A stretch of 64,000 nt of DNA, from assembly GCA_000320545.1 (NCBI GenBank), contig ADNK01000512.1:62001-126000 (forward strand), given 5' to 3'. A model generated the notes under the pieces. The model was not told where the DNA came from and searched no databases. It saw only the letters and a list, made by a program, of their open reading frames with translations. The stretch's first letter is position 1. Each line of letters opens with the position of its first letter. This DNA comes from Bigelowiella natans CCMP2755 (taxonomy: Eukaryota; Protista; Cercozoa). Below, piece after piece: positions 16,302 through 25,327 of the stretch. The translations under genes were made by a program, and so were the position numbers.

Positions 16302-17554
16302 ATGTCTGGGGCCAACTACTCCCTCACCACTTTCTCCCCATCTGGCTCCCTGCTCCAGATCGACTATGCCCTCGAGGCTGTCGGACAGGGAAGGACGTCT
16401 TTAGGAATCAAAGGTGATTTGATGTTCTTAAGCTTCCTGTATAGATTCGATACGTTTAGAGGTCTATGAATAAGAAGTTGCGCATTTTGCGCAAAAGGAA
16501 GGATTTTCTCTTTTGTTCCCATTTTACAAGTTGTATTCATATTTCCTGCCCAGCGTTTCACACCAAGTTCATCTACATCTTTATTTATGTATTCTCCTTG
16601 AAGATTATTTTTTCGAACGTATAAAATAACCTCAAAGCTATTTTTTATTAACCCCATCTGCACTATTTCCCCTCTTGCTTTGACACATTGCAATACAGTG
16701 AAGGAAGGCGTAGTTATTGCTACAGAAAAGATGACTCCTTCAGTTCTCGTTGATCAAAAGTCTAGGACGAAAATTGCCAGCCTATCGTGAGTAGCAATAC
16801 AGTTCTAACACCAAAATCTCTCCTCCTAAGAAAATTCTTAATCGTCATTGATTCAAAGGTCGAATTGCGGGCTTGTGTACTCGGGAATGGGTCCAGATTA
16901 TCGTGTCTTACTACGAAAGGGAAGAAAAATTGCTCAAGAGTACTACATGACATACAAGGACGAGATTCCCGTGTCGCAGATTGTGCGTGAGATGGCCTCT
17001 GTAATGCAGGAATTCACGCAATCAGGGTATTAGAACGCAGCCAGCTTACGATACTCAATACCGTCATATTAAAAATAATCTCCTCTTGTTGTTGCGATTT
17101 TTATCAGTGGTGTTAGGCCTTTTGGGGTATCCCTCCTTATCGCTGGTATCGACGATGAGGGCCCGCAGTTATACCAGGTATTGCAAAAGATCCTATGAAC
17201 ACGATGATACAAGCTATATTGATCTGATGACTTCGCATAGAATCTTCAGGGTATAATTTGTTTGATTTTTTTCTTGAATAGGTTGATCCTTCTGGTTCAT
17301 ACTTTGCATGGAAAGCCTCGGCAATAGGAAAGCACAGTATCAGCGCCAAGACGTTCTTAGAAAAACGATATTTTGCTCATAAAGATATGGGCCTAGAGGA
17401 CGCTGTGCATACTGCTATTCTTACCTTGAAGGAGAACTTTGAAGGAGCAATCACAAATGAGAATATCGAAATTGGAATTATCTCCTTGAAAGACAAAACC
17501 TTCAAAACGAAGAGCAAGGAGGAAATTTCAGATCTTCTTAAAGAAGTGGAGTAG
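16302..17554 (+). CDS. PSMA2: 20S proteasome subunit alpha type 2
   Basis: Five exons: [27 protein letters not shown]; GVVIATEK; [20 protein letters not shown]...VMQEFTQSG; [13 protein letters not shown]; [17 protein letters not shown]...KTFLEKRY...[21 protein letters not shown] at 17552-17554. Confidence 0.97.
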
Positions 17555-18893: not shown

Positions 18894-19740
18894 ATGCAAA
18901 GCAGCGGCTACAGCGCTTAAGTTGACATACACATGCTAGCATGTGATGTGTAAGCAATGTAGCCAGCGTAGCTAGCCTGTCTAGTTGCATGTGTCCAGCT
19001 ATAGTTAATTATGTTATGTATAATACATACAACTGTGCATGTAGTTCTAGCTATAGTTCACACGCCTAGAAATAGTACTTGTTCGTAATAGTAGACAACG
19101 TAATGTGATATATATGATATATATATTATGTCACTATGTCTATAATCGTTTTTGTATAGTGTCTAGAGCTTGAGCCAGACTAGCAGAGTGTCGTCGCTGC
19201 GTCGCGACATCTATGTAGTGTAGCATCGCGTCGCAATATACGACATATCTAGATATGCGCTAGACGCGAGTGTCTATACATTGCCTCTACATGTATCTAG
19301 ATATGTATTGATCGAGTAGCTATCTAGCTGCGAGCAATAGGACACCAAATAAACACCTTTTGCTACCTTTTGCAGCTCATAAGCATAAAGGTGCACTAGT
19401 GCAGCCCAAGGCGACAGATCAAAAAATTGATTATTATTTCGAGTTGTTATGCTTGAACCAACGAGCGACAATTGAACGAATAAAACAGCCAAGATGTGAG
19501 AAAAGCAGCGTCTCAACGTTTCATTTTTATTGGCTCGTCAGAAAAAGAGAGCTCAGAGAGGTTGCAAGTGTTTACACCTACACCTTTATCCGCAGAAGCA
19601 GAGTTGTCGGCAAAATTCTGCTGAACTAATTCGTTATGTTTATAAAAGGTGCAAAATTGTCCCCGCTGTAGACTAGAACAAGGGTGGTTGGTTGCACACA
19701 GGAACAACCGCAGCTAGTCGTTTGTCGATATTATGTAGCA

Positions 19741-20014
19741 TTATTTGTAGGTGCGCCAACCCAGTTCATGGGCATTATCATAGAAGCATTGCCGGCACAT
19801 ATCGATGCCGTATTTACGAATCAATCCCTACACAATCAAACCGCTTGGTTAGATCAGTTTTTACACTTGCTTTGCCCAGACATCATCCACAGTCACAACC
19901 ACGAAGAGCACAATTAACACAAGTACAGCATCGACTTGGAACCTTTCTGTTGTAGCATTGCTTGCATTGGCGGCCACCTTTGCTCTGTCGTCTTGGGTGC
20001 ATCATATATCCTGC
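19741..20014 (-). CDS. RPS29: RPS29/uS14 zinc-finger domain (exons 20014-19943 and 19827-19741)
   Basis: Translation: AGYMMHPRRQSKGGRQCKQCYNRK|GLIRKYGIDMCRQCFYDNAHELGWRTYK*. This matches the eukaryotic S29 pattern HPR..G.R.C..C....GLIRKYGL.MCRQCF....DIGF. Confidence 0.92.
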
Positions 20015-21152
20015 CTGTTATGATTGTGAAAGGAAAGGAAGCACTCAAATAGGAGATCATCATCATTGCAACTACCACCGCTGTCACTGCTGTTGCCCAC
20101 TCTTCTTACTTAATGAATCCAGGTAGTAGAATGTTTCAGTAATACCCGCTTGCAGTGAAAGTGGAGCTCATTGTGAGGTGAGTGGAATATGTCTTCCTCG
20201 TGTGACAGTTCATCCCATTCCTCCCTGGTTACGTATCCTTGAACGCGGTCGCCTTCACGGAGCCGCGCCCGCCAATTTGCTGCATGAGTAAAATCACAGC
20301 TTATGTATCATGGAGAGGGAAGTGACAGAAAAAGGAAAAAAAAGTTGGATTGAGCATCATAGGTTTTGTCTGGCCAGATGACAAAATATGAATGATACAT
20401 GGCAGTAGTAAATGACAATCTCCGTTACCGAATGAGCGTTTTTTTTCCTTCTGGTAATCGTTGTACTCTTTTTCGAGGAGAACTTGGTTCAATACAGGCC
20501 GACTTTCCCGCCCAGCCAGCAGATTTTTCTGATTTTCGCCATCCTCGCTGTCGTCTTCGTCATCGTCTCCATCGCTACCTCCACCACCCTCGTCGCCGTC
20601 GTCCACCTTCTCGTCGTCATCATCATTCTCGTCATCGTCGTCCTCCTCCTTCGCATTATCATCTCCGATTTCACCCTTGTTAACTTTCTCCACCTTCTTT
20701 GCCACGTCATCGTCATCGTCATCATCGTCGTCGTCCTTTTTCTTCCCGGCTTGGTACTTTGTCGCGATGCGATAGAAGAAACCAGCCTCGTCCGTAGTTA
20801 GGGAGGCGCCGAATTTCTCCGAAGAATCGACGGCACTATGTTCCTTTGAGTAATGCCATCATTCAAGTCAATGAAAGAAAGACAATGATAACAAAACGTC
20901 GGTTATACAGGTTTGCATTAGCGTGCAAAGTTCTATGCTATTTCTACTGCTGCTGCTCTTACCGGCCATCCTGATTCTTCATCGGAGTCCTCTGAATCAC
21001 CCCCTCCCCCTTTTCCTCCTTCTTCTTCATCCTCATCCTCCTCGTCCTCATCCTCATCTTCGTCCTCGGTCGGCGGGTTATATAACCCCAGCATCTTCCT
21101 TGTTGAGAGCTTTTGCAGATTTACAGGTTCCTTCGCCTTAATCTGAGGATAC

Positions 21153-21188
<36 letters not shown>

Positions 21189-22811
21189 AATTTTGGTCAT
21201 CAATCAATATCATCATCATCATCATCATCTGCTGCTTCTTGTTCAGGTCTCGGGATGGGTCTTCAAGTAATGGATATATTTTGTGTGTAGGATCTCTCTA
21301 GAGTTTCGCCTCTGATCTCAAAATGCGACAGTTTTCAGGGCATATGTTACACACCGGTCTTCCGTCACTTCCTTCGTCTTCATCGTCTTCATCCTCGTCG
21401 TCCTCTGCAGATTCACCTATTGTAAGTGCATTGACGATGCAAGCGTGTAATGTACGGAAAGAAAGGGGATAAATGAGAGCAACTCAATAATGAATCCAAA
21501 ATAATATCCACAGCTAATTTCGCACCTGTCTTATCCTCATCGTCGTCGTCATCTTCGTCGGTGACTCTAAGTTTCTTTATTTTGTCGGCTACATCGTCTT
21601 CGTCTTCATCGTCATCATCCTTATCGTCATCCTCGTCCTCATCCTGTCCACTTTCGGCTGTTCCACTTTTCTCCTTTTTCTTTTTCTTCTTCTTCCTCTT
21701 CACCGCTTTGCCTTCCCGTTCGTCCAAGAAACGCTGGACTTCCTCAAGCTGATATGGAAATGCTTCCATCAGAACATTTAACGATACCAAAGTAACAGGA
21801 AAGGAGGAAAAAAGGGGAAGCATAGAGGGTAGAGATTGTTTTGTGAATTAAATAGAACACTTACGAAGCTTTCGCTCATATCTCCATACCTAAGAAAAAT
21901 AACAATTCGATTAGGGAAAAATGACGGACGAAGCTTCAGTTGGTCAAATTGTCAACATCAAAGAAAGGGGGAAAGACTTAAGTGTTTTCTACAGATAAAT
22001 GCAACGACTGTGGGCAAAAGAATCAAGAGTAGTTGTAGCGTAGCGGCAGCGGATGTGGCGGTGGCGTTTACATTTCTTCATTCTCTTTCTCCCGCGCATC
22101 CGAACTCACTTCTGTGAACTCGTCTTCGTCTGTTGTGTCGGAAGGAAATGCTAGACCCGAGGTGAGTTTCCCTCCCCTCAGTCCATGTAACATGCTTTGA
22201 ATCGGGGCTGTCCTCGGATCAAGACTAAACAATATAGCCAATGAGAGAGGGGTAGGAAACGGGGGAGAGTATCACAAGGGAGTAATCATAATGATATCGT
22301 CGTATTTCCATAAACTTGATCATCACTGAAGTCGACAAAAAAGATGGGAAAACCTTACCTTGGTCCCTGTAATCCTCTCTGTTGTCCACCTCGCAATATC
22401 ACAGCAGCTCTGCGAGTAGGCGCATACGATAATGATGACGAATGCAATTTTTCTCTCGACGGGGCCGCTTGTTCTATCGATGACGAAAGCGTGGATAGTG
22501 CATGGAGTTCCCTCGTTAAGGATGCATTTCCGGTGGCAGAGTAATTGCATGATAGCACGAACAGTGCAACAATAGTGAAGAGCAACAAGTCCGAACCCAA
22601 TAAAGTGCAGCTCAGCCCTTTGGAATAGGAAAGGAGGAAGTGGAGGAGGAGGAGGTTGGATGAGGGATGAGATAGGGCGCGGGATGATCTTTGATGGACG
22701 CAAATGCACGCAAATGCACGCACGAACAAAAACATACACACGCATACCTCGGGTTCCTCCCTCCCGCCTCCTTCGGCGATGCAGATCGTACAACATCGCT
22801 AATGTCCTCAT
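19741..22811 (-). CDS. About 550-aa protein: signal anchor + transit-peptide-like leader, D/E/K-rich linker, C-terminal ribosomal protein S29 (uS14) domain
   Basis: Eleven phase-consistent GT-AG exons from ATG 22811 (MRTLAMLYDLHRRRRREGGTRGLSCTLLGSDLLLFTIVALFVLSC...) to TAA 19741-19743. One junction (intron 20145-20015) has alternative solutions. Confidence 0.7.
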
Positions 22812-23287
22812 AACAACAACATCGCTGATGCGGTGTAAAGATGAGGCTTTGGTGCGGTTATAATGTCGTTCTTCCCACCCTGGAGCAACCCAAATAGGAC
22901 GATGGCCTCTCACGCTCTATGGAGTTTTGGGGCGTATTCTTTGGTCTGGCAGCGGCAGCAGTCCCTCTCCCCTTTTTGTCTCCTCTGTTTATTTCTCTCT
23001 CTGTGTTGTTGCTTACACCGGGGGTTCGGCATTAAAAAATCTATGTCGCAGTGTGAAAAACGGATCGGGCTTTTTCCGAACCGAATAATTATTTTGCGGG
23101 GAAACCTGAAACAAATTAAAAAAACGGCCTTTCCGCCTGGGGCTTCCAATTTGAACGGTTTGAATTTCGGGCATACGAGTAGCTAGCGGAAAAGGGGGAG
23201 GCAACAGCGCAACACCACTCGCCCTCCGATCAGCGTATCATACCATATAGGGAGCAAAGCTGGTCCTCAATTAAGGAGTGGCAGAGA
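22812..23287. promoter_or_regulatory. Short bidirectional promoter region
   Basis: About 480 bp separate divergent start codons (22811 -, 23288 +). The region is free of microsatellites and has tandem TTTGAA at 23150 and 23159. Confidence 0.5.
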
Positions 23288-25327
23288 ATGCGTTGCTACT
23301 TCCCAACGGTGTTGATCTACATTCACATTAATACAAATGAAGCTACTCAATTGACACTGTAATGGAAAAATCCTAAGCATTTGTTCCTGTGATAATTTAG
23401 AGAGGGGGAAGTAATCCAGTGGTGCTATATCTACTTTCATTGAGTGTTGTGCTCCTTCTTTCTCCATGTACAGCCGTTCAAGCTCAGCAGGTTAAGATAT
23501 CATCCTTTAATCATTGCCGTACCAGCGTTCTCGTCGTAACAGCTACTAATGATTGTTGCAGAAAAACTATTACAAAGACGAAACGTCGGTGCCGGAAAAG
23601 AATTTACAACAGCAATATCCAAGAAGAGGCCATGATTCTGAGGCTTTATACGACGAAGACCGACCTGAGGCAGCCGCGCCAAGGGAATACTACCACGAAG
23701 ACGACGATCAGTACAACGACGAGCACGGAAATGATGTTGGAGCCGAGGTGCGTTTCCGAGAAACATACGAAGGCAGCGAGGAACTAGGGCAGATGGATGA
23801 CATGGATCCCGTCGACGAGGGATATTACAACACCGGCAGAAGGGCTCAGGGGGGGGGGACTGGCCCATACACGCAGAACAGGCTTGAAAGTGCACCTTCC
23901 GAAGAGGAGGAGGAGGAGGAGGACCTCCTTCCTAATGAACCGCGAGACCCAAGAATGGAGCGATATGATAAGAAAAATAGTCGATTCCATCGTGGCAGAT
24001 CACAGTACACACGTTATGGGGCAGTTTTTCAGCCGCGGCTCCCGTCGGAGAGGAAAATGAATCAGGAGTCTCGCAACCTGTACCACGAGGGAATGGCAGC
24101 GGGTTTGGCATCCTGGGTCCCTCCATCACAAGGTAGTGGATCATGATTTAACTTACTAACAATGTATAATGTAAGAACCACACTACCAAAACCACCGATG
24201 ATTGATAATTTTGGTGACGAAAATTACAAAATACTCAATTAAACCTGCACTGTTGTCTCTGCGTTCTAAAAGCCACGACAAATTTCCTCTACGACACGCT
24301 ACCTGAGCTTGCTCGAGAGAGGCAGATGGCGGCACTCAGTGGCGTCAGCCGTGCACCCGAACATCATTCAACAGCCTACGAACAGGTCCCACAGCAGCAG
24401 CAGCAGCAACAACAACAAAGGCCACCGACTAGTAGGAGCAGCAGGAACTATCAAAGAGATGGAAACTTTCAGGCGACAACAGAGACAGCGGCAGCAGGAC
24501 CCCCGCCACCACCCCTTTCACAACAGCAGCGTGAACCAAGACAGATTGCATACAATAATGCACAACTGCGGCAGCAACTACCACCACCACCACCACAATT
24601 AGTATCCCAGCAGCAAAAAGAGCTTTCAAGTAGCAGCGGTGCCTTGCCTCCTATTTCAGAAGGAGCGAATAATCCCGCAACAGAAGCAGCAGAAGAACTA
24701 CAAATGCGGCAAAAAGATATCGTCCAAGGAGGAGACGCAAGCTCATACGAAACCAATACTGGTGCTACAAATGATGGCGAAGGCGAAGCGACAATGAAGA
24801 CGCAACGCACCCCCCCAACACCCCCATCGTCATCTTTCAACGCCAATCAAAACATGAGCATGATGACTAGGAAGAGCAATATTACCGCTATTAAATCAAC
24901 GAAATCAGCGGTAGAGCGGCAGCCCCAGCATCGAAGAGAAGGAGGGGGTGCGGGGGGAGGGGGAGTGAGTGGAGGACACCAGCAGCTCCACAAAGCGGTT
25001 GTGCTTCCCATCCCTCATCCAGCGATCACGGAAGAAGACAACACAGGCATCCTTCGCAATTCTGGTGATATCAACATCAACAAGATCCTGGACGATGATG
25101 ATTCCGAATCGTTCACGATGAGGTTCCGCGAAAAGGCGGAGACCCCGCTCCCAATGACGCGCACGCACGCAAGACATGCGGCAGCAGAGGGAGAATCTGC
25201 CGTAGGTGCTTCTGGGTCTAGCAGCAGCAAACTAAAAGCACACAGCAAAGAGGAGGCCCAAGCAATGCATGGAGGGGGGCAGGCTATGTCTGCAGGAGCA
25301 GGTGGCTAACTTATTGCCGAAGAAAGG

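What the first reader, a model, noticed from the sequence alone, without database searches (positions are those of the whole stretch)
19741..22811. Divergent cytosolic-type ribosomal protein S29 at the C-terminus of a ~550-aa precursor with an organelle-targeting-like leader and a long acidic linker
Seen: two small exons missed by the ORF track encode a complete 4-Cys eukaryotic S29 domain. It can be spliced in frame to nine upstream exons encoding a basic N-region, a hydrophobic anchor (LLLFTIVALFVLSC), an S/R-rich transit-peptide-like segment, and more than 300 aa of D/E/K-rich sequence. Known: S29 is normally a standalone protein of about 56 aa. Chlorarachniophytes and cryptophytes keep 80S ribosomes in the periplastidal compartment (PPC) and import nucleus-encoded proteins using bipartite leaders; acidic residues are associated with PPC retention in chlorarachniophytes. 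Inference: this is a host-encoded subunit of the nucleomorph/PPC ribosome, with the polyacidic region acting as a retention signal or a built-in chaperone for the basic S29. Caveat: the junction at 20145-20015 is not unique, and a standalone start (MMHP) is possible.
Basis: partly seen in the sequence, partly recalled or inferred. Interest (0 to 1): 0.85.

Follow-up and report, generated by a model that had tools for sequence, protein, structure and literature searches.

The report
Oversized ribosomal protein for captive alga
This alga's own nucleus makes a copy of the tiny ribosomal protein S29 that is ten times normal size, with an address label and a long acidic stretch in front; it most likely supplies the part that the ribosomes of its swallowed green-algal partner can no longer make.

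Summary
The genome is Bigelowiella natans. Spliced RNA contigs from three studies support an 11-exon, 557-aa frame: basic N-region, hydrophobic segment, S/R-rich leader with two LRGG motifs, about 300 aa of D/E/K-rich sequence, a conserved 75-aa block, then a complete four-cysteine cytosolic-type S29 (uS14). The questioned 20145-20015 junction is used in all three runs; the TAA and the 'standalone start' do not define the main product. Lotharella globosa has an orthologue with the same layout. Conservation starts at the second RGG, and the block before S29 is as conserved as S29. The host has a separate ordinary RPS29, and rps29 is absent from the published nucleomorph gene list. Second, leader-bearing copies of L35a, L37 and L39 also exist; in L37, RLRGG abuts the mature start. 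Best reading: host-encoded S29 for the periplastid ribosome, cut after LRGG, keeping a ~380-aa acidic extension. Location, cleavage and ribosome binding are inferred, not shown. The class is known; I found no paper on this size or layout, but key papers were not held. The scan noted LRGG leaders and leader-bearing ribosomal proteins elsewhere in this genome.

The parts
22812..23029 (-). Transcribed 5' UTR; in-frame stop upstream of the ATG; a four-codon upstream ORF (ATG 22822) whose stop overlaps the main ATG
   Evidence: contigs reach 23023-23029; translations
22748..22811 (-). Exon 1 CDS: start codon and basic N-region (aa 1-21, net +5)
22359..22617 (-). Exon 2: hydrophobic signal-like segment and S/T/R-rich transit-peptide-like region
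   Evidence: best 19-aa hydropathy 2.28 at aa 25-43
22547..22588 (-). Hydrophobic core, aa 32-45 (signal peptide h-region, inferred; SignalP not available)
22385..22396 (-). First LRGG motif (aa 96-99)
22170..22181 (-). Second LRGG motif (aa 123-126), proposed processing site; conservation with Lotharella starts here and net charge turns acidic shortly after
22072..22224 (-). Exon 3: end of leader and conserved first block of the presumed mature protein
   Evidence: 18/47 identical to P0003, z 8.7 against shuffles
21865..21889 (-). Exon 4 (25 nt)
   Evidence: joints on both sides
21526..21748 (-). Exon 5: short conserved stretch, poly-K run, D/E tract
21355..21416 (-). Exon 6: D/E tract
   Evidence: upstream joint and contig length
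20963..21142 (-). Exon 7: D/E tract
20429..20843 (-). Exon 8: D/K-rich tract and start of the predicted helix before S29
   Evidence: low-confidence model of the orthologue
20146..20279 (-). Exon 9: conserved non-repetitive block directly before S29; single copy in the genome; no known homologue
   Evidence: 22/43 identical to Lotharella, third codon positions 35%; PDB blank
19943..20014 (-). Exon 10: first half of S29 with the first CxxC
19741..19827 (-). Exon 11 CDS: second half of S29 with the second CxxC, and stop
19427..19740 (-). 3' UTR
   Evidence: contigs end at 19427-19468

Best explanation
A nuclear gene of Bigelowiella natans that supplies ribosomal protein S29 (uS14) to the eukaryotic ribosome of the periplastidal compartment, the remnant cytoplasm of the green-algal endosymbiont. 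Shown: one spliced 557-aa frame; an intact zinc-finger S29 at the C-terminus; the same layout in a second genus; a separate host RPS29. From a published list: no rps29 in the nucleomorph. Inferred: the hydrophobic segment sends the precursor into the ER and on to the plastid; the S/R-rich region carries it across the second membrane; the leader is cut after the second LRGG; the remaining ~430-aa protein (about 49 kDa, pI about 4.3) keeps a ~380-aa acidic extension. That extension stops onward import into the stroma, as the K/D-rich tail of periplastid EFL does, and masks the basic S29 domain (pI 9.9) in transit. The conserved 75-aa block next to S29 probably packs on the 40S head or on an assembly factor.
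For: Genome identity. RNA joints in three studies, frame check. uS14 identity. Host copy on contig C2916. Nucleomorph gene list of B. natans and L. oceanica has no rps29 (PMC4035089 file 1). Lotharella globosa orthologue UniRef A0A7S4DN12. Conservation begins at RGG and shows saturated third positions with kept residues. Charge switches from +6 (aa 53-127) to -13 (aa 128-181). Other ribosomal proteins missing from the nucleomorph list have second nuclear copies, with signal-like N-ends seen for L35a, L37, L39; in L37 RLRGG directly precedes the canonical start. About 1000 periplastid/nucleomorph-targeted proteins are predicted in this genome and several were localised by GFP (PMC5635652).
Against: No localisation, proteomics or N-terminal data for this protein. 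SignalP could not be run, and the N-region is long (31 aa). The nucleomorph list is an annotation; a 56-codon gene with tiny introns could have been missed. Lotharella has SRGG, not LRGG, and its contig is cut at the 5' end. A genome-wide codon-pattern count for RLRGG was only modestly above permuted controls (1234 vs 885 and 1009). Only two genera seen. The EFL retention result is from memory (PMID 20133351 not held).
Confidence: 0.62

Rival explanations
1. Same destination, but the acidic region is a removable pro-domain: after import a second cut, perhaps after the conserved KRAG just before S29, frees a normal-sized S29, as ubiquitin is cut from S27a and L40.
For: KRAG is invariant in both species and resembles LRGG. 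Homology to canonical S29 begins right after it. A 380-aa acidic arm on the 40S head would be very unusual.
Against: The whole 43-aa block before KRAG is as conserved as S29 itself (22/43 against 14/24 and 14/25), more than a cleavage site needs. KRAG occupies positions 3-6 of canonical S29, so it may be plain S29 sequence. Ubiquitin proteases need Gly-Gly (established knowledge).
Confidence: 0.23
2. A repurposed paralogue that is imported or membrane-anchored but works off the ribosome, for example as an acidic chaperone with a zinc finger, or that ends up in another compartment.
For: The S29 domain is divergent (23/50 identical to the host copy, 26/50 to Lotharella). Most of the protein is not ribosomal. 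The hydrophobic segment is strong enough to be an anchor.
Against: All four cysteines, their spacing, the HPR and GL-R motifs and the C-terminal end are kept in two genera. uS14 is a universal small-subunit protein and no other candidate for the periplastid ribosome was found. Similar divergence is seen in the second copies of S19, L37, L35a and L39.
Confidence: 0.12
3. Two separate genes, or an annotation artefact: an acidic secretory protein ending at the TAA in intron 9 and a standalone S29 starting at MMHP.
For: A TAA exists at 20112-20110. One run (X1) has slight extra depth over intron 9, and X2 has extra depth over intron 10, so some unspliced forms exist.
Against: The 20145-20015 joint is in all three runs at full contig depth; depth over that region matches exon-only coverage in X3 and nearly so in X2. 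The Lotharella orthologue is one ORF.
Confidence: 0.03

Closest known systems
Eukaryotic ribosomal protein S29 / uS14 (Pfam PF00253; NCBIfam NF004424)
   Same: Zinc-finger core C-x2-C-x14-C-x2-C, HPR motif, C-terminal end; best PDB matches are cytosolic 40S chains.
   Different: Normally about 56 aa and standalone; here preceded by about 505 aa (leader, acidic tract, conserved block); about 46% identical to the host's own copy.
Nucleus-encoded periplastid-targeted EFL of chlorarachniophytes (Gile and Keeling 2008, PMID 18599495; Hirakawa et al. 2010, PMID 20133351; content from memory, papers not held)
   Same: Second copy of a cytosolic translation component, signal peptide plus transit-peptide-like leader, and a K/D-rich extension.
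   Different: In EFL the extension is C-terminal and short relative to the protein; here it lies between leader and domain, is about seven times the domain's length, and contains conserved non-repetitive blocks.
Predicted periplastid ribosomal proteins of B. natans (Curtis et al. 2012, as cited in PMC4494063 and PMC5635652)
   Same: Nuclear genes are known to be predicted for periplastid ribosome components missing from the nucleomorph; this gene fits that set, with S19, L31, L35a, L37, L39 second copies seen here.
   Different: I could not read whether S29 was listed. The L35a, L37 and L39 copies have short leaders and no long acidic stretch before the domain (L37 has a ~90-aa tail ending in D/E).
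Ubiquitin-ribosomal protein fusions (S27a, L40; P1 and P2 in B. natans, PMC6332867)
   Same: A small basic ribosomal protein made as the C-terminal part of a larger precursor; LRGG is the ubiquitin C-terminus.
   Different: No ubiquitin domain here (Pfam on the orthologue); S29 is not in that paper's list; the LRGG motifs lie about 380 aa upstream of S29.

Membership tests
uS14/S29 (eukaryotic type) | Profile or sequence match to S14/S29 | tested here: met
   Exon 11: NF004424 E 4.6e-11, PDB uS14 E 4e-8; orthologue domain PF00253 30.3 bits, above the cut-off of 27
uS14/S29 (eukaryotic type) | Four zinc-binding cysteines with C-x2-C-x14-C-x2-C spacing | tested here: met
uS14/S29 (eukaryotic type) | Cytosolic type rather than bacterial/organellar S14 | tested here: met
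   Top PDB hits are 40S chains; archaeal ones rank lower
uS14/S29 (eukaryotic type) | Standalone protein of about 56 aa | tested here: not met
   557-aa precursor; 446 aa or more in Lotharella. The gene contains an S29 domain; it is not a canonical S29
uS14/S29 (eukaryotic type) | Incorporation into a 40S subunit | not testable with these tools
   needs ribosome proteomics
Nucleus-encoded periplastid-targeted proteins of chlorarachniophytes | Host has a nucleomorph-bearing plastid | tested here: met
   91,405,885 bp in 3736 contigs equals B. natans in PMC12730881 Table 1
Nucleus-encoded periplastid-targeted proteins of chlorarachniophytes | N-terminal signal peptide | tested here: inconclusive
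   Basic N-region and 14-aa hydrophobic core; SignalP not available; orthologue has a hydrophobic stretch at its cut 5' end
Nucleus-encoded periplastid-targeted proteins of chlorarachniophytes | Transit-peptide-like region (S/T-rich, basic) | tested here: met
   aa 53-127: S+T 21%, net +6, D+E 5%; composition only
Nucleus-encoded periplastid-targeted proteins of chlorarachniophytes | Second copy beside a cytosolic host gene, and gene missing from the nucleomorph | tested here: met
   Host RPS29 on C2916; no rps29 in the published list; nucleomorph DNA itself not searched
Nucleus-encoded periplastid-targeted proteins of chlorarachniophytes | K/D-rich extension | tested here: met
   aa 182-430: D+E 44%, 31 K; placed before the domain, not after it
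Nucleus-encoded periplastid-targeted proteins of chlorarachniophytes | Localisation in the periplastidal compartment | not testable with these tools
   needs GFP fusion or fractionation
Endosymbiont-derived (green algal) genes | Branches with green algae | tested here: inconclusive
   Top PDB scores do not separate yeast, plant and apicomplexan; CRQCF-x-x-NA is shared with the plant chain and not with the host copy; no tree built
Ubiquitin-ribosomal protein fusions | Ubiquitin domain directly before the ribosomal protein | tested here: not met
   No ubiquitin match in the orthologue or in the window pieces scanned

The most novel reading that the evidence does not exclude
The nucleomorph ribosome carries an S29 with a permanent ~380-aa arm whose conserved blocks replace head components or assembly factors lost from both genomes (no second eukaryote-type S20/uS10, S21 or S25 was detected), and the precursor is matured at a ubiquitin-like LRGG site shared by many periplastid leaders.
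Probability: 0.25. Interest if true: 0.82.

Novelty: new variant of a known kind. Interest (0 to 1): 0.6.

Why it matters
The nucleomorph ribosome of chlorarachniophytes is a reduced 80S particle that lacks a 5S rRNA gene and many proteins (PMC4494063), and its make-up has not been determined in anything I could read. S29 is a universal small-subunit protein missing from the nucleomorph list; this gene fills that gap. It also gives a handle: a tag on it could pull down periplastid ribosomes away from host ones. The layout offers a clean test of how proteins are stopped in the periplastid, where the leader is cut, and how a cell moves a small, basic, zinc-binding protein across two membranes.

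Tried and rejected
Standalone S29 from MMHP and termination at the intron-9 TAA: rejected as main product. Organellar S14: rejected. Ubiquitin fusion: rejected. More orthologues: three protein searches gave only the Lotharella protein or nothing; two metagenome scans were blank. These searches depend on length and shared words, so the blanks say little. Homologues of the conserved linker blocks: none in PDB, Pfam or the Atlas. Single-sequence structure prediction was poor (pLDDT 51), so no fold search was run. Genome-wide RLRGG count was only weakly above controls. Second eukaryote-type copies not detected for S20, S21, S25, L4, L13, L18, L26, L36; divergent, intron-broken genes could be missed. 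No paper found with rps29 plus nucleomorph and chlorarachniophyte among the 40 listed, or with LRGG plus Bigelowiella. Curtis 2012, Gilson 2006 and Hirakawa 2009, 2010, 2012 were not held. The joined translation was made only inside scripts, to check the frame and composition.

Full report
Organism. The window's assembly has 91,405,885 bases in 3736 contigs, the figures given for Bigelowiella natans in Table 1 of PMC12730881. This chlorarachniophyte keeps a nucleomorph and a periplastidal compartment with its own eukaryotic ribosomes.

Gene structure. Contigs from three sequencing runs of three studies, laid on 19300-23300, skip canonical GT-AG introns, so they are spliced RNA. The tenth intron (21354-21143) lies in a skipped repeat, but my exon set predicts contig lengths of 1236 and 889 nt, exactly those observed. 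The eleven exons give 557 aa without a stop. An in-frame stop lies upstream of the ATG at 22811 inside the transcribed 5' end. One contig joins acidic exon 8 to S29 and the 3' UTR. The two contigs overlap by 29 nt within exon 8, so no single record from this species spans the whole frame. The TAA at 20112-20110 is inside intron 9. Depth there matches exon-only coverage in X3 and nearly so in X2; X1 shows a small excess over intron 9 and X2 an excess over intron 10, which suggests some retention. The raw-read run was too thin to add much.

The domain. Exon 11 matches eukaryotic uS14 chains in the PDB at E 4e-8 and NF004424 at 4.6e-11. Exons 10 and 11 carry four cysteines with the host's spacing. 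The host has its own ordinary RPS29 on contig C2916; the window's domain is 23/50 identical to it. The published gene list for the B. natans and Lotharella oceanica nucleomorphs names most small-subunit proteins but not rps29, rps19, rps20, rps21 or rps25 (PMC4035089, file 1). That is an annotation, not a search of the DNA.

An orthologue. Exon 9 alone, searched against 1.84 billion proteins, found one hit: a Lotharella globosa protein, UniRef A0A7S4DN12, automatically named 40S ribosomal protein S29, encoded on a single 1531-nt contig. It has the same order: hydrophobic start, basic S/R-rich region, RGG, acidic tracts, conserved block, S29. Compared exon by exon, exons 3, 9, 10 and 11 score z = 8.7, 18.5, 14.6 and 18.2 against shuffles, while exons 1 and 2 show nothing. 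In exon 9, 22 of 43 residues are identical while third codon positions match at 35%; exons 10 and 11 give 14/24 and 14/25. The block before S29 is therefore under selection as strong as that on S29. It is single-copy in the genome and has no match in PDB, Pfam or the Atlas.

Anatomy. Residues 1-21 are basic; 32-45 form a hydrophobic core; 53-127 are S/T-rich with net charge +6; 128-181 have net charge -13; 182-430 are 44% D+E with 31 lysines; 431-505 are neutral and conserved; 506-557 are S29, pI 9.9. Two LRGG motifs lie at 96-99 and 123-126; shuffles of the first 130 residues give two in 0.015% of trials. I looked for the motif after seeing earlier scan notes on it, so that figure is after the fact. 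Conservation with Lotharella (SRGG there) begins at the second motif.

Context in the genome. Of other ribosomal proteins missing from the nucleomorph list, S19, L31, L35a, L37 and L39 have a second, divergent eukaryote-type nuclear copy. L35a, L37 and L39 show signal-like N-ends in genomic translation; these models have no RNA check here. In the L37 copy an open frame reads RLRGG straight into the canonical L37 start, and the protein ends in a D/E-rich tail. This is the best evidence I found that LRGG marks a cut site. None of these three has a long acidic stretch before the domain. No second copy was detected for S20, S21, S25, L4, L13, L18, L26 or L36. A genome-wide count of RLRGG-like codons was only modestly above permuted controls.

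Mechanism. Most likely the precursor enters the ER by its signal, reaches the plastid, crosses the second membrane by its transit-like region and is cut after the second LRGG. A protein of about 430 aa remains, whose acidic tract keeps it out of the stroma and shields the basic S29, and whose S29 domain joins the nucleomorph 40S subunit. Transcript structure, domain identity, the orthologue and the host copy are shown. Targeting, cutting, retention and ribosome binding are inferred. I put about 0.85 on periplastid S29 in some form: 0.62 with the extension kept, 0.23 with a second cut near the conserved KRAG that frees a normal S29. A non-ribosomal role gets 0.12 and separate genes 0.03. Green-algal versus host origin is open: 50 residues give only a weak hint (a CRQCF-x-x-NA stretch shared with the plant chain).

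Relation to what is known. Host-encoded periplastid proteins with two-part leaders are established: 1002 were predicted in this genome and several localised with GFP (PMC5635652). Periplastid ribosome components were catalogued by Curtis et al. 2012 (as cited in PMC4494063). From memory, Hirakawa et al. 2010 showed that a K/D-rich C-terminal tail retains EFL in the periplastid. These papers were not held, so I cannot exclude that this gene is listed there. What I did not find described is an S29 ten times its normal size with the acidic region placed in front of the domain and flanked by conserved blocks in two genera. I class it as a new variant of a known kind.

Limits. SignalP was not available. 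The structure prediction was too poor to use.

Noticed in passing
L030 / L048 (G000:C1631, minus strand, around 102092-102253): Second rpl37 copy: signal-like exon upstream, RLRGG directly before the canonical L37 start, and a ~90-aa C-terminal extension ending in D/E. Good test case for the LRGG cut site.
   Followed up: partly
L042 (G000:C3724:40061-40573, plus strand): Second rpl35a copy with a signal-like N-end, no LRGG seen, and a C-terminal extension.
   Followed up: partly
L052 (G000:C3674:32736-32804, minus strand): Second rpl39 copy with a signal peptide-like start and a very short leader, no acidic tract.
   Followed up: partly
L016 (G000:C3671:5437-6018) and L035 (G000:C2848:13593-13655): Divergent second copies of rps19 and, on a weak profile score plus inspection, rpl31; leaders not reconstructed.
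   Followed up: no
whole genome: No second eukaryote-type S20 (uS10), S21 or S25 detected although they are also missing from the nucleomorph list; uS10 neighbours uS14 in the 40S head.
   Followed up: partly
window 22822-22808: Four-codon upstream ORF whose TGA overlaps the main ATG.
   Followed up: no
window 19827-19942: Extra depth over intron 10 in run X2 suggests partial retention, which would cut S29 after its first CxxC.
   Followed up: partly
L047 (G000:C2916:2204-2400): The host RPS29 may carry about 12 extra N-terminal residues (68 aa from the first Met seen); its first exon was not checked.
   Followed up: no
window 16848-17554: Neighbouring proteasome subunit gene on the plus strand (PF00227), converging on this gene.
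   Followed up: no
ESM Atlas: A eukaryotic cluster named putative RPS29 with ubiquitin domains in 97% of members (two Foraminifera records): a possible ubiquitin-S29 fusion in other Rhizaria.
   Followed up: no
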